A stretch of 64,000 nt of DNA, taken from assembly GCF_016432865.1 (NCBI RefSeq), contig NC_067400.1, positions 338,396,001 to 338,460,000 on the forward strand, read 5' to 3'. The DNA comes from Antechinus flavipes (taxonomy: Eukaryota). How positions within the stretch are numbered: position 1 is the stretch's first letter; each line of letters begins with the position of its first letter. The notes below the pieces were generated by a model. It was not told the origin of the DNA. It saw only the letters and a list, made by a program, of their open reading frames with translations, and did no database searches. Positions 386-52,573 of the stretch are shown in pieces. The position numbers were made by a program, and so were the translations under genes.

Positions 386-859
386 TTGGAATGATGTGAC
401 TATAGTGGAATGGCATTATCAAAACAAGCCAAGAAACAAAAGGACTTCCAGGGAACTCACTAGTGATGAGCAGAATTGAAGTTCCTACATATAGTTCAAA
501 CTGGAGTTTTAACTAATCAACAATTTCACATTGAACACATAGTATGTGCTCGACCCTGCCACGGAGGTTAGGGAGGGTACAGAGGTATAGGACATGGTTT
601 TTGCCCTCTAAAAGAATACAGTGAGTCAGGGAGCAATAAAATCACAAAGACTTCCATAACAATATATAAGTAAAATGTTAGTTCCCCAAGAAAAGCTCTC
701 TTAAGGGCAATCATGATTAATTTAGAAAATAAGTAAAGAAGACTAAGTGCCTATGTGGAGAGTATGGTATAATAGAACACTGGCTATGACATTGGAAGAC
801 TTGAGCTAAGAAAAGGTAACTTGTTACATTTAGCAATATATTCTTTTCTTAAGCAAGTG

Positions 860-1475
860 GCATAAAAGTGATTAAAAAGAATAAAACAATTTTTATTGCA
901 TGAAGATAGAAAGACTTGCCAACAAACAAAATCAACAAACTAAGAATAAAAGAGAAGCTATTGACTAGAGGGAAAAAAGTTTGTCTCAACTATCTATGAC
1001 AAAAGTCTTATATTCAAGATAAATAGGAAACTTATACAAATAAGATCAATGGCTGTTTCTCAATGGATAAGTGATCAAAGGATATAAATAAATAATTCTC
1101 AAAAGAGGAATTGCAAAGTACAAATAGCATGTAAAATATTTCTCCAAAATGACTAATAATAAGTCAAATACAAATCAGAAAAACTCTGAGATTTTACCTC
1201 ACAAACAGCAGATTAGTAAAAATGATAAAAGATGGGAATCATCGCTGTTGGAAGCACTAGAAAAATAGTGATTCAAGAAAACACTTTTAATTGCTCTGTG
1301 AATTGCTCCAACTATTCTGAAAAGCAAGTATACTCTGCAAGCAATATATCTTTTGACCCAAAGATCCTACCGTTAGACATAAAGTAGGTCAAAGATTGAA
1401 ATAAAAATTCCATATCCACCAAAAATATTCATAGCACCATTTATATAATAGCAAAGAACATTTTTGAAGTAGTGA
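860..1475 (+). mobile_element. Old L1 ORF2 C-terminal fragment
   Basis: A-rich strand with L1 ORF2 remnants (caatggataagtgatcaaagga, aaactctgagattttacctcac, tttgacccaaagatcc, aaaatattcatagcac); many stops. Confidence 0.7.
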
Positions 1476-1489
1476 GAAACCTTTTCCAC

Positions 1490-2150
1490 CAAAATAACCC
1501 CTATTTCTAACTTCCCTGGATCTAGTGAAATTTCTACCTGGTTACCAAATCTCACAAATTTAGTCATCATTAACTCCTCAATCTCCCTCGTCCATTCCTT
1601 ATATCCAATCAATTGCCAACTTTTGTCATTTCTACTTTCACAATGTCAACAAGATTTATCCTCTTTTCTTACATAACCTTCACCCTAGTTCTAGCCTTTA
1701 TTACCTTAATTGCAATAGCCTCCCAATTGTTTTCCCAACTTTACATCTTTCTTTTTCCAATCCACTTTCAATATGATTACCAAAGTGATTTTCCTAAAGT
1801 ACAGATTTAGCTACATCATTGATTTATTTAATAATGATCCCCCATTCATCATCCCTAAGAAAAAATGTAGGATTTTAAAGCCCTTTTCAGCTTGGCCTCA
1901 AGCTATCTCTTGAGCTCCATTTATAAATTTTTCCTCTTCATACTCTCTGGTTAAAGTTGCCTTCTTTTTCTAGCTTTCTATATCCTGTCCCCAATGCCTC
2001 ACCACTGCAGCAGAATAGAGTCAAGGACTCCTGTGTGAAATTCACTCTCTCCTTATTTTCTTTTCTTAGAATCTCTAGATTCCTCAAGTGCCACTTCTTA
2101 TATATTTTTTTTTCTAATCCTCCCAAATGCTTGTGTCCACTTTCAGAACC
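1490..2150 (+). mobile_element. L2 LINE fragment
   Basis: Pyrimidine-rich L2-like text (tccaatcaattgccaa, ttccaatccactttcaat...ccaaagtgattttcctaaagtacagattt). Confidence 0.55.
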
Positions 2151-2260
2151 TTTTAAATATTTTGTATGTGTTTATATCTTGAGAAGATCAAACTGATTCT
2201 TATCATTTCTTATTGGTGTAATTTACACTAGTTGATTTTGTCCTATTACTGCCTAACAAT

Positions 2261-2452
2261 CAGGGGTCCTCAAACTTTTTAAATAGGGGGCCAGTTCATT
2301 GTCCCTCAGACTGTTGGAGGGCCGGACTATAGTAAAAACAAAAACTTTATTTTGTGGGCCTTTAAATAAAGAAACTTCATAGCCCTGGGTGAGGGGGATA
2401 ATCGTCCTCAGCTGCCGCATCTGGCCTGCGAGCTATAGTTTGAGGATCTCTG
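2261..2452 (+). mobile_element. Non-autonomous hAT MITE, OC1 (OposCharlie1)-type, 192 bp
   Basis: Terminal inverted repeats CAGGGGTCCTCAAACT ... AGTTTGAGGATCTCTG (2 mismatches). The 5' sequence ggccagttcattgtccctcagactgttggagggccggactatag matches the OC1-family start as I recall it, and several CpGs are retained. No 8-bp TSD match (ctaacaat vs gaagtcat). Confidence 0.8.
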
Positions 2453-3043
2453 GAAGTCATAGTTCTTTGTCTCTGAACTTAGTCCAGGGATTTAGCTGGC
2501 CTATAATGGGTTAAATTTAGAAATCTAGTTCCTGCTAATCACTGTTTTATTCTTGTCTCAAGGAAATTTTCTATCCTTGAGGGAGATGCATAGACATCAG
2601 GGAGTCTGGTCTAATATCTATACACCACCAACCTATCTTTCAAGGATGTCTGGTTCACTATCTGACTGTGTAAGCAGACTCAAACAATGAACATTGTTTA
2701 GTCAAAGGAGAGAAGGAAAAGATTGTTGCTAACCCCTCATTCCCAATTTCTAACCAATCATATTTTCCCTCATGCTTCAGCTCTATAACCAATCATCAAT
2801 TTTACCATTCATGTGGTCAAGTTCTTATAACCAATTATAATTCATTGCCTACCTACCAAGTCCTGTTCTTTGTACTGTACTCCCCAAAATCTATATAATC
2901 TATATCTATATAAAAAGAACACTCTCATTTGTGGTCTTTTCTTTGCTGAGGAAGCCAAGATCCTATTTATTAGTAAATTCACACTTTACTAATAAATTAA
3001 TCATGCTCAGAATTTTGTGTTTCAATTTACCTTCATTTTAACT
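2453..3043 (+). mobile_element. Solo ERV-type LTR
   Basis: U3-R-U5 layout: three TAACCAAT(C/T)A CCAAT boxes (2751, 2786, 2828), TATATAAAAA at 2907, AATAAA at 2991, then ~45 bp of U5-like sequence. Exact ends and TSD not resolved. Confidence 0.65.
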
Positions 3044-3864
3044 GTTAAAATCTATACATTTTATTCCCTCCTGATAGAATGCAAAATCCTTAAAGACAAA
3101 ACCCTTAAAGACAGGAATTATTTTATTTCTGTCTTTGTGTCCCTAGTGTCTAACATAATATATAGCACATAATAAGCATTTAATGAATATTGGTTGTTTT
3201 ATTGATTGAAATAAATGACCATCAATTAGGAAACCTGTGAACAAACTGTATTACATGAAGACATCAAAATATTAATGTACCATAAGAAATATTTAATTCA
3301 GAGAATTCAAAAAAATAGAAAGATTTATATGATGTTTTGCTAGTGGCCATACTATTGAAGTCACCACTCACATTGTTGAGAGAACACTAGCCTTGCCTGA
3401 GCCATAAAAGGGAGAGAATCTCTGCTTTTGAGGCATGCATGATGTTCCTGAGGCTGGTACAGGCCCCACATTTGGCAAGGACAGGAAGTCCTGCTCCCAA
3501 AGGTGCAGTGGCTGGAGGACCTAGTCATAGTCTTGGTCAGCATTTATAAGACTGAGGATAAGGTTGGGTTCCCTATCGCTAAGGGGTCAGGGAGTCTCTA
3601 CCTTGCCTCCAAGTCCTGAATCCCAACATCAGGATAATGGGTCAGCTGCCAAAGGATTAAGCCCCAGTCTTGTTCAATAATTTATGGATCCAGCAGAATG
3701 AATGCCATTAATGTCCTCTAGCTAAACACTGATATTAGAGTCCTGAATCCTGGCACCATGCTCATCAGATATTGGAGTTATCCCGCTGAATTATCCCTTT
3801 TTAGGAAAATTGTTCATGAGTTAGAAGACGGGGGTACAGGATAAGATATGAGACATTGAGGTCC

Positions 3865-4352
3865 TTTTCAAACTAAACTACCAAGCACTCTTACTCTTCT
3901 GCAGAGAGCACAACTCTATTGGGCTGGGCACATTGTTCAAATGCCAAGTGTATCATTGTCCCAAAAAAAGTGATTTTAAGGAGAATTTAGGGCAAGCGTT
4001 CAGGTCAGAAAAAAAAAAAAAAAACAATGCAAGGACATTCTCAAGGTATCTTTAGAATCAATAGTATGACATAGGAAACACTAGCACAGAACCACTCAGC
4101 ATGACATGCCCTCATCAGAGAAGGTGCTGTGCTCCATGATCAAAGCAGAATTGAATTATCTCAAAAGAAACGTGAGATGTGCAAAGTTAGAGAAGTATCC
4201 CAGTTGTTCATAGGAACCAATTGTGTCTGACCTGTGGAAAAGCATTCTGAACTCATAGTGGTCTGATCAACAAGTCAGACACAAGATAACTGGACTCTAA
4301 CATAGTGATGTCATTTTGGACTTTTTCAAAAACAAAGGACAACAACAATCAA
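3865..4352 (+). mobile_element. RTE LINE 3' end
   Basis: cagagagcacaactctattgggctgggcacattgttcaaatgcc and gccctcatcagagaaggtgctgtgctc, ending ttcaaaaacaaaggacaacaac; same family as 20050-20665. Confidence 0.8.
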
Positions 4353-4490
4353 CCACTGGAGCACCTGGTTTAGTATGTTGATTCCTAATCTCTCCAGGAA
4401 GGACAGGAGATATCAGTGAGGTTGTCTGTCCTTTTGTGTCTATGAAAATGTGATTTGACTTAGTCACAACCTGATTAGGAGCTCATGAAC

Positions 4491-5276
4491 TGAAGGGGGG
4501 GGGGGGGGCGGCGGTCCTTGTGGTCCTGTTTGACCTGTTGCCCATCTGGCTGCATCGATTGGATTCTGCCAAGAAGGGATGACTCTAAGAGTCATTGCAG
4601 GAGGCTTTATTAGCAGATTATTGACACTTCTCAGGACTGGCAGTTGGTGAGCAAGAAGTAGAAGTTCCAGAGACAGATGATGCAGGGCAGAAGAAGAACA
4701 ACAGAGCCTAGGGGAGTTCCATACAGGACTTTAGGTGATCCCTGAAGGACAGGGAACAGTTTCTGGGTAATGGCTGAGAATGGGAAATGATCTAGCAGTC
4801 TAGGAACTGTCAGTGATTGTTTCACTGATAGTGTTAATGGGGATTATATAGGGTTTGAGTGGAAGGACATTATATGGATGTGAGTGGGGCATTCCTCCTT
4901 ATCTCAAGGTGAGGAAAGGGATATTTCTCCTAGAAGTCAAGGCAAGATTAGAGCATTTCTGTTTAAACACCTGAATGATTACAGACCTTATCTCCAAATG
5001 AAGTGTACTAAAGGCCCATCTAATGTATTAGCTTTTGAGCTCTGTTGGCTTTATTCCAGGAATTGTAGGTAGCCTATCAGAGTACACAGTTGGGGCCAAG
5101 ACATGAGAGGTTTTAGCAAGCCAACTATTATGTTTCCAAAGTGAATTAAAATTGTGTTACAGGTGAAAATTGCAATTTGGGTCCCAGGTAGTAAGATAAA
5201 GCTTAAGAGATAAAGTTAAGAGATAAGAGTTTAAGAGATAAAGTTTAAGAGAATCAGCCTGTTTAAGAATTATCAA
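4491..5276 (-). mobile_element. Solo ERV-type LTR
   Basis: On the minus strand: tandem U3 repeats (5191-5250), TATA-like CCCTATATAA (~4845-4854), AATAAA (plus TTTATT ~4607), U5 ending ...CCTTCA at 4491. TSD not found. Confidence 0.6.
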
Positions 5277-5690
5277 AGGATCATGGAGAAAAACATAGTC
5301 TCACTGCAATGAACTAACTGATACAAAGTGAAATAAGCAGAACTAGGAAAATAGTTTTCACATTGATTAAAACAATGTAAATGGTAAGGGGGAGGGACCT
5401 GAATGCTACATGATTATTATGATCAAGCTTGGACCCAAAGGAAAAAAAAATGAGAAAATGCACCTTTCTTTCTTCTTTGCTGAGCCAGGACTGATTACAG
5501 GCACAAAACATTGTTTATATCACTGGACTTGGTTGATACATCAATTAGTTTTGCTTTTTTTTTTCTTTGTTTTTTGCTTGAAAGGATAAATCTCTGGAAA
5601 GAAAAGGGGAAGGGATATATCTTGAAGTAAAGGAAATGTATCATTCTTTCAAATTGTAAATAAAATAGATGTAAATAAAACAATGGGTTA
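5277..5690 (+). mobile_element. L1 3' end/3'UTR
   Basis: gaactaactgatacaaagtgaaataagcagaactagg motif, marsupial L1 3'UTR and A-rich end. Confidence 0.7.
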
Positions 5691-5879
5691 AAACGTCAAT
5701 TACTTACTAATAGTATGAATCTGAACGAATTCTTTTATTTTACCTCAGCTTCCTCAAATATAAAAAGGATATGATAATACCATAAGGAACTATGTAAAGA
5801 AACAGATTTTCTTGGGGAGGGGTCTTTATTGGAGCTCATGTTATACCCACTAATTCAAGGTATATATTTCCCCAAGGCT

Positions 5880-6200
5880 CTGGGCTGGGACTTCTTCACT
5901 TTTCTATTGATACTATTTCACTAAATGACCTTAATTATCATCTCCAAGTAGATGAAGCCCAGATCTAGTATTTAGACCTAGGTTTTCTCTTGAGTTCCAT
6001 TTTCACGTTACCAAATGCCTATTGAACATTTCAAACTTAGTACATCCAAATCAGAACTCAGTTTCTTACCACCCTAAATCCACTTTTCTTACAAACTTTA
6101 TCATTATTGTCAAGGGAATCCCCATCCTTACATTTACCCTGTTTTCACAATCTCATTGTCATCCTTGATTCCTCTCCCTAAAAATCCAAATCTGGTCATT
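5880..6200 (+). mobile_element. L2 LINE RT-region fragment
   Basis: ttaattatcatctccaagtagatgaagcccagatcta and aaacttagtacatccaaatcagaactc (degenerate LKLNMSKTEL-type motif). Confidence 0.6.
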
Positions 6201-6414
6201 TAATAAGGTCCCATCAATGTATTCTCATAGAGGGATATGAAGATCAAATGATAAATTACATGTAAAGTACTGTTATAACTGTAAAATGCTAATATATGTG
6301 TTAATATATCAGTAGTATCATAGTTAATGCTAAAAGTTATCTAGTATAAATTATCTAGTACAAATCTCTTACAAAATCACAGATACTATATAACATGTCC
6401 CCAATAAGAAATCA

Positions 6415-6582
6415 CTTAGCCCTGGGATCCTTGAACTTTTTTTAAAATGTTTTGATAACTCTAATTCAATATAATTGGTTTCTTTTATAATCTTGTGCAT
6501 CTTGTTTTAAAACATTATTCTAAGAAAAAGTTCATAGATTTCATCAGAATTTCCAAGGGATTTATGACATAAAAGGGTAACC
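6415..6582. mobile_element. hAT-Charlie-type MITE fragment
   Basis: Same family as 31506-31967 and 34919-35120 (ttcaatataattggtttc, aaacattattctaagaa, ttcatagatttcatcaga). Confidence 0.5.
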
Positions 6583-7037
6583 CTCAATCTAGCCTCTACT
6601 TAAAAGTGTCAAAGAATTCATTATCTTCCAAGGCATCAAACAACATTTTTTTTTACAGTTCTAATTATTAGAAAGTTTTCTTTGTGTTGAGTCAAAATTA
6701 CAACAGTAATTTCCTCAATCATTTCTATGCATTTCATGGTACAATGGGAAAAGCATGTTGTATTTAATAGCTTGGGTAAATCTGATTTCTCTAGGTCTCA
6801 GTTTCCTCATTTTTGCAATAAATATAAAGGATTAAATGATCTCTCAGGTCAATTTCAGTTTTAAGTCTCAGATCCTATGATCCCAATTATCCCCTCTAAA
6901 ACCCAAAAGAAAATAAGGGAAAGCTCTCTCTAAAAGTTTTGTTTATGGAGTCCTTATCACCAGAAAGAACACAGAAGTAGGAGGACTGTACTTTGGCCTG
7001 GCTCAAAGATGGGCAAAGTTTATCTTTAGCATTGTAT

Positions 7038-7039
<2 letters not shown>

Positions 7040-7087
<48 letters not shown>
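7040..7087. repeat. (CA)n microsatellite
   Basis: Uninterrupted AC run of ~24 units. Confidence 0.98.
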
Positions 7088-7089
<2 letters not shown>

Positions 7090-9943
7090 CCTGGCTTGAT
7101 GCCTTCTGCCTGTTTCCATCTAAATTGAGGCTCCCTTCTTTTGTGTCTCATCACTTCAAAATTTAAGGTTTCAATTAACTATGTTAAATTAATTCATGCT
7201 CGTGTGCTAACAGGAGAGATGTTTGTCTTTTGCTATTAAATAAACTGCACGCATTGCCATAGTGACAATGATCCATTTTCATCTCAGCTTCTCCCTTACT
7301 TTTGTTATCTCTGTTGACTTAATGACCCTTCTTCCCCTGATTCTGTGGTTGAACCCTAGCCCCACATTCAGACAGCTGCTTTGTTATCTTGCTCCTGGTT
7401 CCAGTATCTGGCTCCTTCCTCTGTAAAAGAAACAACTTCTCCTTATTGGCAGCAACATGGATGGATGATCCTTTGCTGGTTGATACTAGGCAACTCCAAG
7501 GGTGTATCTTGAAAGCTGGGAGTAAGACTATCATTTTCCTCTTAATAATAATAGTTTACATTTCTATTTGAAAGATGATTTCTTCAATAGCCATGTGAAA
7601 TAAACAATGTCAATAGCAGCATCATTTTAAAAATGAGAAAACTAAGGTTTGAAGAAGGGAATAATTTTGCCTCCTTCAAACCTTAGGTTTTTCATTTGTA
7701 AAATGATGATAATTTGTATAATTAACTGATGTAGAAAGAAGAGGAGGCTGAAGAATGATCAGGTAGAGGTGTCCCAAAACCAACATTGGCCAGTTTTGCT
7801 CAAGGACACCCTGCCTGACTTTCAGGGATGGCATGGCAAGAAAATGAGAAAATAACTGTAAAAGCTCTTAAATCACATAAAAGGACAAAAACTCTCTAGG
7901 AATATATGGTGATGTCATTAGATGAGTGGACCTAAGTGCATGGTAGCAAGATCTCCACATCAACAACATGGACTAGCATAGGAAAAATAGCAGAGAAAAA
8001 TCAAACTCCCATATTCCCTTTGGTTTCTCTTCCCACTACCTGGAGAGAGTGGAACAGTGAGGAGTCTGGCCCGGCTACAGAATTCTCAAGTTAATGACAA
8101 GTGCATTACTAAGGGGGCTGTCATGAGCCACAGCTCCCAGCTGGTACTAAACTCCCTGGAAGGGATAGCCTATCAGTCTCATTGATTGGACTGCAGCCCC
8201 TGCCAGTGCAGCTAACTATCAGAGGGGGTTTCATAATGAGGAGAGGAAGAAAAGAACAAGATACAAGGGGAAGGAGAAGAAAAGGGGAAAGGGAGAAGGA
8301 AGACGAGATTAGGCTCAAAAGAAGGCCCAGATTTAAATATTCAATCCCACAGCTATTTCTCTTTTACTACAGAATGTAATGTTATTGGGAAAGTTTATTC
8401 TTTCTAATGCTGAACTTAGTATGTAGATTTTTCTCATCCTCAAGTTCTTCCCTTCACCCAGCCTAAGACACAGACTAGCCCTGTATCTATGCAAGTAGTT
8501 TGATTCACAACAGTCACATGGTAAAGATCTAATCATCTCACCCCTAAACTACTGCAACAGCCAAAAATCTGATGTTCTGCCTTCATTCTATCAATTGGGT
8601 CCTATTGAATAAGCATTCATTAGGTGCCTGCTGTGTGCTAAGCACTATACTAGATACCAGATATATAAAAACAAAAACAAAGTAGCTTCTGCCCTCAAAG
8701 GGCAGAAAGGAGCTTATATTCTGCTAGGACCTTCCAGTGCATTCTACATACTATCACAGGAAAAGGAATAGAATACTGTGTGGTCCCTAATCAGAGGATA
8801 GCATAACAGAGTAAGCATGGAAGAATAATTTGCAGAGCCATAAATAAGGGGGAGCATCTGGGACTTTGATCCAAACAATAACATCCTTCAAGAAGTTTAC
8901 TATGCTCATCCCTCATGCCTTAAATTCCTCTAGTGACCTGTGCACTAGTGAGGAGGGAAAAGTAAGTCATGCCCTAGAAGAGGCTAACAGAGTAAGGCTA
9001 CAGGCTAGTAGGAAAGAGGAAAAGGCCTGGCCACCCCTTCTGTCCATGATGAAACTATTCTCAGATTAAGTATAATCTCCTCTAGTGGACCTGTAGAGGA
9101 GGGGGACTGAATCCCCTGGAAATAAATCAGAATTTTCTCCTCTGGACTGGAAGTCAAGAGATCTGATTTCTAATCTAGATTTTTTCACTCTGTGACAATT
9201 TCCTTCATTTCTCTAAGTCTCAGTTTCTTCATTCATAAAACTGAACCTGGGTTAGATCTCTAGAGATCTTTTAAACTCTGATGTTCTCTATAATTCTGTT
9301 ATTCAATAGACCATCACTCCTCATTCCATCACAGTGAACACAAGGCCCTTAATCTGCAAAAATACCCACAGAGTTTTGTTTACTTCAGAGAATTTGTTTG
9401 TTGAGATAATATTGACTTTTGCAACTTCCCTTTAGTCCACTATTGGGTACTAGTCCAGGGAACTAAAGGACATTCCTCTCTGGGGTTAATGTTTATTAAA
9501 GCCATAAAATAAATATGCAACATTTCCCATGAAATTTCCATTCAGGTCAGGCCTCATCCTTTATTCACATAAGAGATTCACTTATTTTGTAATCCATAGC
9601 AAAGGTAATATTTACATGCAGAAGGTGAAAAACATTTCCACTGCAATCTATAATGCTTAGTTTCCCATTAAATCCACCATTATTAACATTGAGTGGAATT
9701 CACAACACAATTTCTCCAGGTTCAGATGAAGTCCTACCTCTCCATGAATTCATACTGATATCTCCCTGATCTAGCTTTTTATACCACTTAATGTTGCTGC
9801 CATTCATTTACTACCTGTCATAGACTGCTGTGGTTTTTTAAACTGTTCATTTATCTATGTCCTTTATTTTCACTTAGAAAGGAAGCTGCTTGAAAGTAGA
9901 TACCCTGTCTCATTCATATAAATATAATATATGTTATCTGTGG

Positions 9944-10059
9944 GTATACATATACATGTGTATGTATACATATATACATACATATATGTGTGTAGACAGA
10001 CAGATAGATATAGATGGATAGACAGACAGACAGATAGATAGATAACTAGATAGATAGAT
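9944..10059. repeat. Compound microsatellite (TA/TG, then GACA/GATA)
   Basis: Directly visible. Confidence 0.95.
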
Positions 10060-10722
10060 CTTCCCATAAGTAGTGAAGCATTATGGTGAAGTCAATGGAG
10101 TCTTGAACTTGAAGATAAGAAAACTTGATTATCCCTTTGCCAGGGCATTCTCTGTGGGGACAGAGTTTAGGAAAAATGATGGTCCAATCATCTAACAGAG
10201 GTTGGATTACCTGCAGTAATTAAAAATGTTTCCTTATCTGAAATTCATAGAAATCACTTTTTGCAACTAATCCCGACAGCACTGATCAAGGGATATATTA
10301 GCAGTCTGCTCAGATTCACTGAATTTTATCTTATGTGCTAAAAAAGAAACTCACAACAAGGCAACATCTTCTCTTCATTTATTAATGATGAGTGCCCAAA
10401 GTTTGCTTGATCTCTTCTTATAAGGCAGACAAACAGCCAATCAAGAAAAGGACAGATGTGAAAGAAAAATCCATATCAGAGTTAAAGCAATTTCTTCTTC
10501 ATGGAATTAAAACAAATAAATAACAATCTTATAAAAGTTACCACAGAGAAAGGCAGCACAGTACATTGGAAAGGGTCCTTAATTTGCAATCAGAGAAGTA
10601 AGATCCAAAACATGATTCTGTTATCTGCATGATTTTGAGGAATGGAAATATTACAACTGTCTGTGTGACCTTGTTCAATCACATGACTACCCTGCCCTAA
10701 GCCACAATTTCCTTTTCTGTTT

Positions 10723-10906
10723 AAAAAAAGAAAGAAAGAAAAGTGGGGAAGGGAATGAGGAGTAAATAAGAGGGAAGGACAAGACCAGAAAGGACAGGAA
10801 AAGAAAGAAGAGAAGAGGACAGGACAGGACAGGAAAGGAAAAGAAAAGAAGAGACTAGAGGAGAGGAGAGAGGAGAAGGGAAGGGATGAAAGGGAGGAAA
10901 GGAGGA
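10723..10906. repeat. Purine-rich low-complexity tract (GAAA/GGACA/GAGAG units)
   Basis: Directly visible; produces the spurious 119-aa minus-strand ORF. Confidence 0.9.
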
Positions 10907-13900
10907 GTATATACTGATTACATACCAAATCTGTTCTGCGTGGTTGCATTAATGGGTATGTAAAATATTAGGACCTGTAGTTTTATCCAATTGGGAAAGT
11001 CCTTTTTCTCATATCATTTAGTCCTAACTTGTGATAAAGTAAATGAGGCCAGACTTGAAGTTAAGAAAACCTGTATTCAATTCCTTGATATTAACACATT
11101 TGATGCGGGATCGGATAAAAGACTCATCTCTTTGATATGGAATAATTGATATTATTTCTTAGCCTGTATTGGGAAGCAGTGAGTCCAAGATGTTTTATAA
11201 CTGATTCAAGTCAAAGGATCTTGGTTAAAACCTGTCTCTGATACTGCCTACACAACTATGGGTAATTCATTTAATCTCTCTAGGTTTTAGTTTCCTAAAC
11301 TTTAAATGAGGATTTGGACTAGATGTCATCTAAATCTATGATTCTAGAATCCTTCTCTTCTTGGGAAGGACAAAATAAGTTAAAGTCTCATGCATTCCAT
11401 TCTCTTCCTGATTCAACCTGTTGAGCTATATCTGAGGTGAGTCTGTCTTCTACCATCAAAATTTCAGGGAATTCCCTAGAAACAAGGAAGAAGAAGAACA
11501 TGGCATTTTCTGTGAGTGGTGGTCTCATTTACATGTCCTTAATTGCTTTCATTCAGACCACCATATTTCATTGTCTCTCCTACATGACACAAGCGCATTT
11601 TTAACAAAATTTTCTGGTAATGATGCATTCATAGAATGCAAGTTCCTTGAGAGTATGAATTATTTCATCTTTATCTTTATATCCTAGATGCCTAGCACAT
11701 GACAGTACTTAATAAATATTGATTGATTGATTGATTATACAATCAAAGGGTCAACATCAGAGAAGAAGAGACATCAGAGGTCATCTACTATAATCCCTTC
11801 ATTTTACTGGAGAGGAAACTAAGCCAAAAGAAGCTAAATAATTTGTCCAAATTCACACAAGTAAAGAGAGGTAGAATATGAGCACAAGACCTCTAATCGT
11901 ACTAATTCTACTAATGTCATGCTAAGTGACTCATACTTGAAGTATACTTTCAGAACCAGAACATTCCAATAATCTCTCAAACAAAAAGAATACCTGCTAC
12001 ACATAATATTTTCAACATGCAAAGGACCTTTCACCTAGAACCACATTTGAGCTTCATAGTAACCCTCTGAGATAAATACTGAAGGTATTGTTAACCTCAT
12101 TGGCAAAATGAGGAGATTGAGTAAGGCTCAGATTTGAACACAAGTCTTCCTGACCCCTAAATATATTGTTCTGACTACTACAGAGACCACTTCCCCTAAT
12201 ACTTTCTAGGATGAAAAATGAGTGTTAAGAACAATCTTACCCTTGATCAAGATAACCACTTGACAAAATACTTCACTAACTCTCTTACCATCTACATTCA
12301 GAATTTCTGGAATTGTGTTTTCCCCTGGGAGAAAAGAATTATGCTGACTTCACAGAATGAAACTGTCTTGGATCTGTGTGTTCCCACAAGGGTCTCACAC
12401 ATAGTATACAAATGTTTAATAAAGTATTTAATAAAAGCTTTTTGGTTTTACTTTATTTCCTTCTTTCTTCCTTCTCTTTTCTTCTATATTTGCCTTGGTT
12501 CCCTCTTGATAAAATCATTGAGGGAAATTAGGGCTTCCAATGTCTTGTGAATTCAACCTTTGTAACCTCAAGAGATTTTTTTTAATCACAATATATTAAT
12601 TAATATGACTTCCCATTTTCAGATCTAGCAATATTTAATTATCCAGAAAGGACACTTAGAGCACAGAGAGGAACTCCCCAACTTATGGAAATCCACAAAT
12701 CATGGGTGCCTGTAGTATTTCAGAAGCCTCAAGAAAATGTAGCACCCTCTCCTATAGTACACATTTCCCAGACCAACCAAAAATTCTGCATAAAGGGGAT
12801 TTTTATTTCAAACTAGTTCCTAGGTACAGACTCCTTGGTATTTGCCTTAGCAGTTAAGGCAGAAGCTATCTAGGACTGAAGTATGTCTCCCTAAGGCCAG
12901 ACTGTCCATACTATATGGCAAATATTCATCAACAATCCAGAAAACTAGTAGAGTGGGCCTGTAAGGACATATTTGTTGTCAATCTAATGGTTTGTTTACA
13001 TAATTCAACTCATTAGACACTGTTAGTACACCAAGGAGCCCCTTTGTTGGTTCCAAGAACAACAATTAACCTTGGGGACTAAAGAGTAAACACAAGGAGG
13101 ATTTATCACTTTGGCAGCCTCAACAAACACAATTTTGTTGTGCTAAGGGCCCCTGCTAAAGACAGCAGCCATCTGTTAAATAAACTGTTAGGTTGGGAAC
13201 AGAGCTGCTAACTAACACCGACACAATGCTCCAACTTGATAATAACTGATGGACGTTATATTCTAAAGATAAAAGAACTTTGAGAATTACAGTGGTTTAG
13301 TTAATACTTACCATCAGAATTTATACCGCCTTATGAGAGCTCTCCTCCAGAGTAATAACCTTGAGGAGCTACAAACTTATTCCAAGGATGTTACAATTGC
13401 ATAAAAAAGTAACTCCTCTCTTGTAATTGTCTTCAGAAGCAGTTTATAAAGCACATGAGAAAATTAGCCTCTTTTTTTCCCAAAAAATCAGTATTACCTA
13501 ACTTGAATATTCAACTTAGCCACAAGACTTGATTCCAAATGTCCTTTTAATTTTCAAAGTAAAATTTATTTTGCATGCTTCACATAATTTTATTTTCAAA
13601 AAGCAAATCCACCTTCAAAGATTGTTAAGACTGTAGAAGTTCAAATGAATTGGAATGGTCATTCTCAAAATGGATGAAGAAAAATATTTTAAGCAGTGAC
13701 AGCATCCTTTGAATAAGCATGTTCAAAGCAATTGCTTTAAAGGAGTCAGAATTTATTTGATTGTATGTTATCACAAATAGAAAGACAGAAACTTGAGGCT
13801 GAGAACAAGAAGGCACCAAATGTTGCCAATAACTTTAATAAAGGCTTCCATTGATCTCTTTGGGATGCTATAGGTAGTTTATATAAGCAATGATCTTTGG

Positions 13901-14464
13901 GCTGATCATTATAATATGACTGAAGAGTTGGGTGGTTTTGATTGGCTAGTAAGAGAGCAATGTGAGCCTTTATTAAGACAAAATAATACAACTCTGTAAG
14001 TTTGGTTCCCTGGTTGCTTTTACTTATTTGTCTGAATTTGCATTTCCCTATGCTACATTTGAATTTGGGGGAAAATCATACAACGGCTGTGTTGTGAGCT
14101 GCTTTATGTCTCAGGCATGGAATATACCAGAAGTTTTGACAATAATGAATCTATGTCTCAAAGTCAATAACCGCTGTATACATGATAGCATCTTTTGAAT
14201 CTTGTCCCTATAATTTTGGACACATCTTGTTGGAGACTACAGAACTCTGATTAATAAAAGCCAGCAGCATAGACTTCACAACCCACAAACCTATAAGTCC
14301 AAAAGTCAGACCAACATTATCCATGGATTTGGTAAACAGCTATGATGCTTACTCAGCTTGTGATGTGCCAAGAATATCTCAACATATCAGCATGATGAGT
14401 GGTACCAGCATTATCTTCCCTAGCAATTCTCCTGCTACCCAAACCATACTTTGGGATCACATGT

Positions 14465-17978: not shown

Positions 17979-19278
17979 CTCTAATCTAATATTACCTTTT
18001 TGCAAATAAGTAAGAGACATGTCCATGGTCACAGTCGCAGTGAAAGTCCCAGGATTTTAACCCATACCTTCTAAAACCCATATCTAATACTCTTTCTACT
18101 TCTGAACAAAACCTTTTGAGTCCTTTCCTTTTTTCTCTTGGGCATGTCAGTGTCAGGGTAGGGCACCTTATGAGATAGCATTCACAGGACCTTGAGAAAA
18201 TCTAAGTTTTAACAAGCTTTTTAGAATATTGGGTCCATTATTTTGCAGCTACATTTCATACAGTTCACTGACCATTACAAAGTTCTGAAATAGTAGCATG
18301 AGGAAGAATTCCTGATTTAAAAAGAAATCAAGGATTTTAAAAATCATTCTCTCTAATCATACTTTCCAGTCTAGTTCACAGAGGAGATTTCTATGCTTGA
18401 AGTGTCTTGGAAGATTACAGAAAGGATGAGGGAAAGCTTACATGAGCAGTTACCTGTTTATGAGATACAAATTCTGACATCTCTCCCAAATTTTTGCCTC
18501 TCTACTGACAGTTGAAATTTTACAATTAAGATTTTATTCTTTTACTTAACACTTTGGAACCCCAGTAAAATTTAAATAGACTTGGTAGAGTCATCCCTTA
18601 AATTATTTTCAGTTGATGTGTGAGTTACAAATCCTGTCTTGGAACAATGGGGGAAGAGAAAGTAAGAGATCAAGGTGCCTATGATGGACTTTTTAAATAC
18701 AAAACTGTGGATTGATTTGTAGCAAGTATGTTCTGCTCATGTTCCCTGAGCCAGACACACTATATCTGCCTCTTCAGGTTTCTAGAAGAATCAGTTCTCT
18801 CCTCTAATCTTCAACTCAAACCCCCAATGGCTGTGTTCCTTCTATGTTTAAGTGCCAGTGACTAGTACTCTAGTTCCATTTAACTATTAGTATCAATTAC
18901 CTTTTACAAAAGTTTATTTACTTCTAAGATATAGCAAGAATAGAAGTACATTTCCCCATAATAGCTTGGAAGTACACTCTGCCTGTACAACTTGCTGTCT
19001 GAGAAGAAGACATTCAAATTTAGTCTAGTTCTGACACAACATTGGTCCCATCAAATTCATGCCAAAATATGTCATTACTGTCAGAAGAGTTCATGTCTCA
19101 GTTACTATTATCTGAGTCTGAAATGTTATTACTGAACCGTCACACAACTAGGAAATGTCTAAGTCTAGATTTGAATTCAGGCTCAACATTCTATCACCCA
19201 ACTGCCCCAGAAACTCTCCAGGAAATAGTCTTCACATAAAAATTTACAATCATGAGTGTTCTGTGCAAGCTCCAAATC

Positions 19279-19372
19279 CTACAATATTATGCAAGAAAAT
19301 AGGATGATTCAATAAACCTTGTTACAAAAAACGGTTTATTGAATCATCCTATTTTCTTGCATAATATTGTAG
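19279..19372. repeat. Perfect 40-bp inverted repeat with 14-nt spacer
   Basis: CTACAATATTATGCAAGAAAATAGGATGATTCAATAAACC (19279-19318) is the exact reverse complement of 19333-19372; spacer TTGTTACAAAAAAC. Confidence 0.97.
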
Positions 19373-19554
19373 ATCACAAGGAAAATGTTAAGCTCTGGTA
19401 TACCTTAGGTGCTTATCTTGGATACAACCTCAGACAAAGTATGTAAGTCAGCGTAGAACATCAAATGCCTTGAGAACAGGGACTGATTGATTTTTATTTT
19501 TATATTCCAGGCCCCAGCTCAATATCTCCACACATTTGGGTGGGGTGTGAGGAA

Positions 19555-19800
19555 GAGGAGAAAGGAATAATGACTTGCATCTGTGATTCCATTGGTAAAA
19601 GGAACTCAATAGAAGAAAATTCTCTCTGCCAGAGAAGCCAGGATTTTTTCCTACTTATAGTATTTGAGACACAGAGAAATTTAATGACTTGTCCAGAAAT
19701 TTAGTGACGTCACACAACTGATATATATCACAGTCAAAAACTGAACTCAGGTCTTTCTGACTTTGTGGCCAGTTCTCTGTCCAATACATCATGTAATTAC
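19555..19800 (+). mobile_element. WALLSI4-like marsupial SINE
   Basis: ccattggtaaaaggaactc...gaaaattctctctgcc...gagacacagagaaatttaatgacttgtcc...aactcaggtctttctgactttgtggccag. Confidence 0.55.
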
Positions 19801-19849
19801 TCACCAAAACAGGTGTTTAATAACTTTCTTTCTGTAAAATGAAGGGGTT

Positions 19850-20045
19850 GGACTAGCAACTAGGTATGTGCAATGTACATAATGGTCAAGTCAACAAGAA
19901 CCGAGTTCAAATTTGATTTCTAATATTTACTAGCTGTGTTACCTTAGACAAGTCACTTACCTCAGTTTCTTCAATTGTAAAAAATGGAGACAATGATAAC
20001 ATCTACCTCCTAGGGTTGCCATAAGGATCAAATGAGTTAATATTT
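19850..20045 (+). mobile_element. MIR-family SINE
   Basis: gagttcaaat...ctagctgtgttaccttagacaagtcactt...ctcagtttcttcaattgtaaa core. Confidence 0.75.
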
Positions 20046-20049
20046 TGCA

Positions 20050-20665
20050 AACCACTGATAATGAGATTGATAAATGCATTGCCAGAGCTAGCTCAGTTTT
20101 GGGGAGGCTCTGAAGGAAAGTGTGGGAGAGGAGAGGATTAGACTGACTACCAAACTAAAGGTCTAGAGAGCCATTGTGCTGATCTCATTGTTTTATGCTT
20201 GTGAAACCTAGAGGGTCTACCAGTGCCATCCTAAGAAACTGAATCTCTTCCATTTGAATTATCTTAGAAGGATCCTGAAGATCACCCAGCAGGATAAAAT
20301 AACAGACACTCAAAGCCAAGCATCTGCAGAGAGTGCAGCTCTGTTGGGCTGGTCACATTGTTCGAATTCCTATTGCACACTTGCCAAAAAGATTATTTTA
20401 TGGAGAATTCACACAAGGCAAGCACCCAAAAGGTGGTCAGAAAAAGTGATATAAGGATATTTTCAAGGTTATCTCTTAAGAATTTTAGAATTGATTGTAT
20501 AACATGGGAGACACTGGCACAGAACTGTCCAGCATGGCGTGCCCTCATCAGAGAAGGTGCTGTGCTCTATGAGCAAAACAGAATTGAATTAGCTCAGCCA
20601 CACTAACTCAAATCTAACATAGTTATATCATTTTGGTTCTTTTCAAAAACAAAGGACAACAACCA
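20050..20665 (+). mobile_element. RTE LINE, C-terminal ORF remnant and tail
   Basis: Degenerate reading DNEIDK(R)IARASSVLGRL(R)RKVWERRGIRLTTKLKV(Y)RAIVL...RRILKIT..QDKI, then gccctcatcagagaaggtgctgtgctctatgagcaaa and a caa-repeat tail. Confidence 0.9.
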
Positions 20666-52346: not shown

Positions 52347-52573
52347 NNNNNNNNNNNNNNNNNNNNNNNNNNNNNNNNNNNNNNNNNNNNNNNNNNNNNN
52401 NNNNNNNNNNNNNNNNNNNNNNNNNNNNNNNNNNNNNNNNNNNNNNNNNNNNNNNNNNNNNNNNNNNNNNNNNNNNNNNNNNNNNNNNNNNNNNNNNNNN
52501 NNNNNNNNNNNNNNNNNNNNNNNNNNNNNNNNNNNNNNNNNNNNNNNNNNNNNNNNNNNNNNNNNNNNNNNNN
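52347..52573. other. Assembly gap (227 N)
   Basis: Run of N. Confidence 1.

What the first reader, a model, noticed from the sequence alone, without database searches (positions are those of the whole stretch)
19279..19372. Perfect 40-bp-arm hairpin: candidate de novo pre-miRNA, cruciform or unknown TA-flanked MITE
Seen: two 40-nt arms with zero mismatches and a 14-nt spacer, 94 nt in total, in otherwise unique sequence. This cannot be a chance match in 64 kb. The arms begin C-TA and end TA-G, so it can also be read as a 37-bp-TIR element flanked by TA. Established: replication template switching creates perfect local inverted repeats and has been proposed as a source of new miRNA hairpins. 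Tc1/mariner MITEs such as MADE1 have this size, have TA TSDs and have given rise to miRNAs. Inference: perfect identity implies a recent origin, arm-to-arm conversion or selection.
Basis: partly seen in the sequence, partly recalled or inferred. Interest (0 to 1): 0.7.

Follow-up and report, generated by a model that had tools for sequence, protein, structure and literature searches.

The report
Young backwards-copy hairpin scar
A 39-base stretch of this marsupial genome was copied backwards and pasted 14 bases upstream of itself, making a perfect 40-base-pair hairpin; it is a real but ordinary scar of DNA copying that jumped template, not a jumping gene or an assembly error, and nothing shows that it does anything.

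Summary
Arms 19279-19318 and 19333-19372 are perfectly complementary over 40 nt, with a 14-nt spacer, and nothing else in the window resembles them.

Short-read contigs of three other organisms (A, C and D, about 1-3% divergent) contain the palindrome. Their contigs break exactly at the arm borders, as a k=31 graph must. The assembly fold-back reading is therefore refuted.

A relative about 6% divergent (organism F) has one contig across the locus. It carries the upstream flank, the spacer, the right arm and the downstream flank, but no left arm. The empty site therefore keeps half of the 'element', and contig depth is single-copy. This refutes the MITE reading.

The window equals the F-type sequence plus one 39-nt reverse-complement copy of 19334-19372, inserted with a 3-nt junction ambiguity (CCT). 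This is a template-switch mutation of type 1-4-3-2.

Organism D already carries one arm mismatch. Zero mismatches elsewhere fits neutral drift since the event, so neither conversion nor selection is needed.

The miRNA reading could not be tested, because no RNA run holds the stretch. No Rfam family matches and there is no CNNC motif.

The scan has already noted two larger template-switch inverted duplications elsewhere in this genome. This one is ordinary and a new member of a known kind.

The parts
19279..19318 (.). Left arm: the derived copy. It is a 39-nt reverse-complement insertion whose placement is ambiguous by 3 nt (any of 19278-19316 to 19281-19319).
   Evidence: Absent from the organism F contig, which joins 19280 to 19333 through 12 spacer-like letters (tables 5, 5c, 8). 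Deleting any of the four 39-nt frames gives the F junction.
19319..19332 (.). Spacer: ancestral sequence that becomes the hairpin loop.
   Evidence: Present in organism F as a 12-13-nt version with a shorter A run (table 5c). Organism D has A at 19332 (table 3).
19333..19372 (.). Right arm: ancestral sequence and the source template of the copy.
   Evidence: In organism F it is contiguous with the spacer and the downstream flank in one 2035-nt contig at single-copy depth (record 25).
19278..19280 (.). CCT, repeated at 19317-19319: a 3-nt microhomology at the return junction of the insertion.
   Evidence: Four equivalent deletion frames.

Best explanation
The hairpin is the scar of one templated inverted insertion. 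In the common ancestor of the window's species and organisms A, C and D, after the split from organism F, a DNA polymerase left its template at about 19278. It copied the neighbouring 39 nt (19372 back to 19334) from the complementary strand or from the folded-back nascent strand. It then returned to the original template at a 3-nt microhomology (CCT). Nothing was lost: the event is a net insertion lying 14 nt from its source. In the four-point model this is a type 1-4-3-2 template-switch mutation. Since then the two arms have drifted as ordinary neutral DNA. Shown here: presence in four genomes, absence of exactly one arm in a relative, exact reconstruction by one copy, and single-copy status. 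Inferred: the polarity (one outgroup only), the enzymatic context (replication fork versus repair synthesis) and the absence of function.
For:: the organism F contig (record 25, 2035 nt, 6.1% divergent) spans 18826-19280 and 19333-19825 with only 12 letters between, so it has the spacer and right arm but no left arm; in X1, X6 and X7 the upstream contigs end at 19308 (the outer arm border plus k-1). The inner contigs cover 19289-19362 (30+14+30). In X7 the inner contig covers 19284-19367, because of a T>C at 19337 that shortens the perfect arms to 35 nt; depths of these contigs are 18-38, like the single-copy flanks at 21-29, whereas SINE bins reach 14,000. L->19278 plus the reverse complement of 19334-19372 plus 19318-> reproduces the window exactly, with a 3-nt junction ambiguity; no other copy in the window. 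(PMC5453318): type 1-4-3-2 creates an inverted repeat, makes up 31% of high-confidence human-chimp events, and needs only 2-3 bases of identity at the switch points; expected arm mismatches are 1.2-2.4 for the allowed age range, so 0 (window, A, C) and 1 (D) fit neutrality.
Against: Only one relative without the arm could be laid, so polarity rests on parsimony and on the coincidence of the indel with the arm borders. It does not rest on a second outgroup. The outer junction (19278/19279 against 19372/19373) shows no microhomology. No contig of A, C or D was laid on 19370-19437, so the junction between the right arm and the downstream flank in those species is taken from the window and from F. 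Differences in F inside the right arm may sit among the 19 rows the tool did not show.
Confidence: 0.82

Rival explanations
1. Same origin, but the hairpin is transcribed and processed by Drosha/Dicer into a lineage-specific miRNA, or by Dicer alone into endo-siRNAs.
For: The geometry is close to the preferred pri-miRNA: a 40-bp stem and a 14-nt loop containing UGU, against a preference for about 35 bp with a loop of 10 nt or more (PMC10710096). Template switching is documented as a source of new miRNA hairpins.
Against: No Rfam family reaches its threshold; the best is 43.5 bits against a gathering score of 95, and the hits are generic long-hairpin matches to plant families. There is no CNNC within 30 nt of either strand's 3' flank. 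No RNA run holds the stretch. No gene or exon was recognised in the window. Organism D has an arm substitution, and the hairpin changes at the same rate as the flanks (2/84 against 15/483). In primates about 6,000 such hairpins gave about 18 miRNAs.
Confidence: 0.04
2. The insertion was made not at a replication fork but during repair of a double-strand break. A resected 3' tail snapped back on itself at a short microhomology and was extended, as polymerase theta does in alternative end joining. It was then joined to the other end. This is a mechanistic variant nested inside the best explanation, not exclusive of it.
For: Snap-back (in cis) templated extension by Pol theta and templated insertions at repair junctions are documented (PMC4912351, PMC5068794). 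The 3-nt microhomology at one junction and none at the other fit end joining.
Against: A 39-nt insertion is long for typical Pol theta insertions (own knowledge, not checked here). No flanking deletion accompanies the insertion. The sequence alone cannot separate the two mechanisms.
Confidence: 0.25
3. The palindrome is older than the split from organism F, and F secondarily deleted exactly the left arm.
For: Only one relative lacking the arm was examined. Long palindromes are deletion-prone (established knowledge).
Against: This reading needs two events, and the second must undo the first to the base within a 3-nt ambiguity. Hairpin-guided slippage brings the outer ends of both arms together, so it would remove the whole palindrome rather than one arm. 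At that age 2.45 arm mismatches are expected, and P(0) is 0.087 or less.
Confidence: 0.05
4. A TA-flanked palindromic MITE of Tc1/mariner type inserted here.
For: The ends read C-TA ... TA-G, and the size is MITE-like.
Against: The empty site in F retains the spacer and right arm instead of a single TA. Contig depth is single-copy in four genomes, while real repeats in the same stretch reach hundreds to thousands. There is no other copy in 64 kb.
Confidence: 0.01
5. An assembly fold-back artefact.
For: Long-read chimeras can create palindromes (general knowledge).
Against: Independent contigs of three other organisms carry the flank-arm and arm-spacer-arm junctions. One of them has its own two substitutions.
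Confidence: 0.01

Closest known systems
Short-range template-switch mutation (TSM), four-point model type 1-4-3-2 / 3-2-1-4 (Loytynoja & Goldman 2017, PMC5453318)
   Same: A reverse-complement copy of adjacent sequence, placed within a few tens of bases of its source, creates a new perfect inverted repeat in one step. There was no pre-existing repeat, and the switch point shows 2-3 nt of identity. The four-point product reproduces the window exactly.
   Different: At 39 nt the copied fragment is on the long side but inside the reported range; up to 90 bp in complex sequence is given in PMC9435742. The event is a pure insertion, with nothing replaced.
TSM-born miRNA hairpins such as hsa-mir-4713 and mmu-mir-3086 (Monttinen et al. 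2023, PMC10710096)
   Same: A lineage-specific perfect stem made in one event from unstructured sequence, with stem and loop lengths suitable for Drosha.
   Different: Those loci have small-RNA evidence and sit in transcribed contexts. Here no expression data exist, no CNNC motif was found and no constraint is seen.
MADE1-type Tc1/mariner MITEs
   Same: About 80-100 nt, palindromic, with TA at both ends.
   Different: This one is single-copy, and the relative's site keeps half of it. It is not mobile DNA.
Pol theta snap-back templated insertions (PMC4912351)
   Same: An inverted templated insertion primed at a short microhomology next to its source.
   Different: It is longer than usual and has no accompanying deletion. 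The context (break versus fork) is unknown.

Membership tests
Template-switch mutation, type 1-4-3-2 | The derived sequence equals L->1 plus the reverse complement of 2->3 plus 4->R of the ancestral sequence, with no residual differences in the copied part | tested here: met
   the product equals window 19000-19700 exactly, with a 39-nt fragment.
Template-switch mutation, type 1-4-3-2 | A related genome retains the state without the copy | tested here: met
   the organism F contig lacks the left arm only. Just one such relative was laid, so polarity rests on parsimony.
Template-switch mutation, type 1-4-3-2 | The source lies within the same short region (tens of bases), giving switch-point order 1,4,3,2 | tested here: met
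   The source at 19334-19372 lies 14-15 nt from the insertion point.
Template-switch mutation, type 1-4-3-2 | The event arose during DNA replication rather than break repair | not testable with these tools
   The sequence scar is the same for both mechanisms.
MITE (Tc1/mariner-like, TA duplication) | Many dispersed copies in the genome | tested here: not met
   Single-copy contig depth in four genomes. No other copy in the window. No whole-genome search was possible.
MITE (Tc1/mariner-like, TA duplication) | The empty site in a relative lacks the whole element and keeps one TA | tested here: not met
   organism F keeps the spacer and right arm.
Animal pre-miRNA | A stem of about 35 bp with an apical loop of 10 nt or more | tested here: met
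   a 40-bp stem and a 14-nt loop.
Animal pre-miRNA | Small RNAs of about 22 nt with Drosha/Dicer-consistent ends | not testable with these tools
   no RNA run holds the stretch.
Animal pre-miRNA | A match to a described miRNA family | tested here: not met
   nothing at the gathering score. The best hit is 43.5 bits against 95.
Animal pre-miRNA | A downstream CNNC processing motif | tested here: not met
   none within 30 nt on either strand.

The most novel reading that the evidence does not exclude
This 1-3%-divergence-old hairpin, born in one template-switch step with near-ideal Drosha geometry, is already expressed as a genus-specific miRNA or endo-siRNA. That would make it a dated marsupial example of de novo miRNA birth, with both the 'before' and 'after' states preserved in living species.
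Probability: 0.04. Interest if true: 0.6.

Novelty: new member of a known kind. Interest (0 to 1): 0.2.

Why it matters
It is a clean, datable example of how one copying error creates a perfect 40-bp hairpin from unstructured DNA. The state before the event survives in one living relative, and the state after it survives in four genomes. One of those four shows the first decay mutation. Such loci are the raw material proposed for new miRNA genes. Together with the two larger events already noted in this genome, it suggests that a systematic template-switch scan of dasyurid genomes would be productive. By itself it is an ordinary mutation scar.

Tried and rejected
1. Rfam with permissive thresholds on 18500-20200, and at gathering thresholds on the whole window, gave only generic long-hairpin hits to plant miRNA models, far below their cut-offs.
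2. A search for diverged copies of the arm or flanks in the window found none. The only flank matches are SINE fragments.
3. The ten longest stop-free frames of the window were scanned against Pfam to place the hairpin in a gene. Nothing matched, so intron versus intergenic remains undecided.
6. I considered fetching orthologous contigs through spurious ORFs with the protein look-up tools. I dropped this because exact-sequence look-ups cannot reach relatives 6% divergent.
7. Selection or arm-to-arm conversion as the cause of the perfect identity was rejected. Poisson expectations and the mismatch in organism D make neutrality sufficient.

Full report
**Observation.** The sequence is as described. 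Window 19279-19318 and 19333-19372 are exact reverse complements over 40 nt, separated by a 14-nt spacer.
- The pairing stops at the outer ends, where 19278 C faces 19373 A.
- Inward it can be stretched to 45 nt with two mismatches and a 4-nt loop.
- The arm occurs nowhere else in the 64 kb, even allowing 3 mismatches, and 0 of 100 shuffles match. Short-word BLAST finds no weaker copy.
- As RNA it folds at -62.9 kcal/mol, z = -14.7. As DNA it folds at -41.7 kcal/mol, z = -16.3.
- It is the outstanding local inverted repeat of the window.
- The window is AT-rich (35.7% GC) and strongly CpG-depleted (170 observed against 2031 expected), as expected of vertebrate non-coding DNA.

**It is real, not an assembly fold-back.** The run search found holders in several organisms that form a ladder of word sharing: A 0.89, B 0.65, C 0.53, D 0.34, and E/F/G 0.17-0.19. 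I laid Logan contigs of X1 (A), X6 (C), X7 (D) and X9 (F) on 18826-19825.
- A k=31 de Bruijn graph must break at a perfect 40-nt inverted repeat exactly 30 nt inside each arm border, and that is what is seen.
- In X1 and X6 the upstream contig ends at 19308 (19279+29). A separate 74-nt contig covers 19289-19362, which is 30 nt of arm, the 14-nt spacer and 30 nt of arm.
- In X7 the upstream contig also ends at 19308, but the inner contig is 19284-19367. X7 carries T>C at 19337, so its perfect arms are only 35 nt. It also has C>A at 19332 in the spacer.
- Three further organisms therefore hold the flank-arm and arm-spacer-arm junctions, one of them with its own substitutions.
- X1 differs from the window at single-copy sites (18983 and 19010), so it is not simply the same haplotype.

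**What the locus looked like before.** X9 (organism F) gives one 2035-nt contig (record 25) at single-copy depth.
- It lies on 18826-19280 and on 19333-19825, with 28 and 30 differences respectively (6.1%).
- Only 12 letters, a spacer-like string with a shorter A run, lie between the two pieces (tables 5, 5c, 8).
- F therefore has the upstream flank, spacer, right arm and downstream flank, but no left arm.
- A script shows that deleting any of four 39-nt frames (19278-19316 to 19281-19319) from the window gives the F junction. The insertion is thus 39 nt with a 3-nt ambiguity, CCT.
- Concatenating L->19278, the reverse complement of 19334-19372, and 19318-> reproduces the window exactly.
- The remaining 1-nt length difference lies in the A run of the spacer.

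**What this excludes.**
- A MITE insertion would leave an empty site without either arm, and would have many copies. Here half of the 'element' is ancestral. The contigs over it also have depths of 18-38, like the flanks at 21-29, whereas true repeats in the same stretch (SINE cores near 19132-19199 and 19744-19777) reach 1,000-14,000. The TA at the ends is coincidental.
- The alternative polarity, an old palindrome with loss of one arm in F, needs two events, the second exactly undoing the first.
- Hairpin-guided slippage juxtaposes the outer ends of both arms, so it would remove the whole palindrome rather than one arm.
- At that age 2.45 arm mismatches are expected, giving P(0) = 0.087.
- I rate that reading at about 5%. 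It could not be excluded with a second outgroup, because read laying is capped at one call.

**Mechanism.** The pattern is the type 1-4-3-2 template-switch mutation of the four-point model.
- The polymerase leaves the template at point 1, copies 2->3 in reverse complement from the other strand or from the folded-back nascent strand, and returns at point 4 just after point 1.
- This type 'creates an inverted repeat' and made up 31% of high-confidence human-chimp events. No pre-existing repeat is needed, and 2-3 bases of identity at switch points are typical (PMC5453318).
- Fragments of 39 nt are within the reported range; the longest event in complex sequence was 90 bp (PMC9435742).
- A repair variant cannot be told apart from the scar. 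In it, a snap-back extension of a resected 3' end by polymerase theta is followed by end joining (PMC4912351). I treat it as nested in the main explanation.
- The step from 'copy made by a polymerase switching template' to 'at a replication fork' is inference.

**Age and selection.**
- The event lies between the split from F (half-distance 3.06%) and the split of D from the window's lineage (half-distance 1.55%).
- Over 80 arm sites this predicts 1.2-2.4 mismatches per lineage. The window, A and C have 0 and D has 1.
- The hairpin changes in D at the flank rate (2/84 against 15/483).
- Perfect identity therefore needs neither arm-to-arm conversion nor selection.
- With the ancestral A at 19332 (seen in D and F), the repeat was probably 41 bp when born.

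**Function.**
- Nothing indicates one. No Rfam family reaches its cut-off anywhere in the window.
- The sub-threshold hits at the hairpin are generic matches to long plant miRNA stems.
- There is no CNNC motif within 30 nt on either strand.
- No RNA run holds the stretch.
- The ten longest stop-free frames of the window have no Pfam match, so I cannot say whether the locus is intronic or transcribed.
- The geometry (40-bp stem, 14-nt loop with UGU) is nevertheless close to the preferred pri-miRNA shape.
- Template switching is a documented source of new miRNA hairpins, although only about 18 miRNAs arose from about 6,000 suitable primate hairpins (PMC10710096).
- I put the expressed-small-RNA reading at about 4%.
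- Cruciform extrusion is physically possible for a perfect 40-bp repeat. The 14-nt spacer and 27.5% GC arms say little either way, and this was not testable here.

**Context in the scan.** Two earlier notes on other pieces of this genome describe larger template-switch inverted duplications. One is 191 bp, pasted into a MIR. The other is 263 bp, in a SWI5 intron, and its note names the yellow-footed antechinus. I did not re-test them. They agree that this kind of scar recurs in this genome.

**Verdict.** The origin is a single templated inverted insertion. The MITE and artefact readings are refuted, and the miRNA reading is open but unlikely. This is a new member of a known kind and of low interest by itself.

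Noticed in passing
window 7620-7708: A second hairpin-like inverted repeat with 42-nt arms, 88% complementary, and a 5-nt loop (sequence). It may be an older, decayed event of the same kind.
   Followed up: partly
window 19370-19437: No contig of X1, X6 or X7 was laid here, although X9 covers it at single-copy depth. The tool warns that filtered contigs leave holes. As a result, the junction between the right arm and the downstream flank in A, C and D is not directly covered.
   Followed up: no
window 19132-19199, 19708-19777 and 18894-18961: MIR/SINE-like repeat fragments. Summed contig depth is 500-14,000, and hundreds of contigs run on into unlike sequence. The hairpin lies in unique sequence about 100 nt downstream of one of them.
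   Followed up: partly
window 19010: The window has A where all four laid organisms, including the 6%-divergent one, have G (table 3). This is a window-specific derived allele or a consensus error.
   Followed up: no
window 52347-52573: A run of 227 N: an assembly gap or masked stretch. It was left untouched.
   Followed up: no
window 9935-10006: A TA/TG-rich microsatellite that scores as overlapping palindromes. It is low-complexity sequence, not a discrete hairpin.
   Followed up: no
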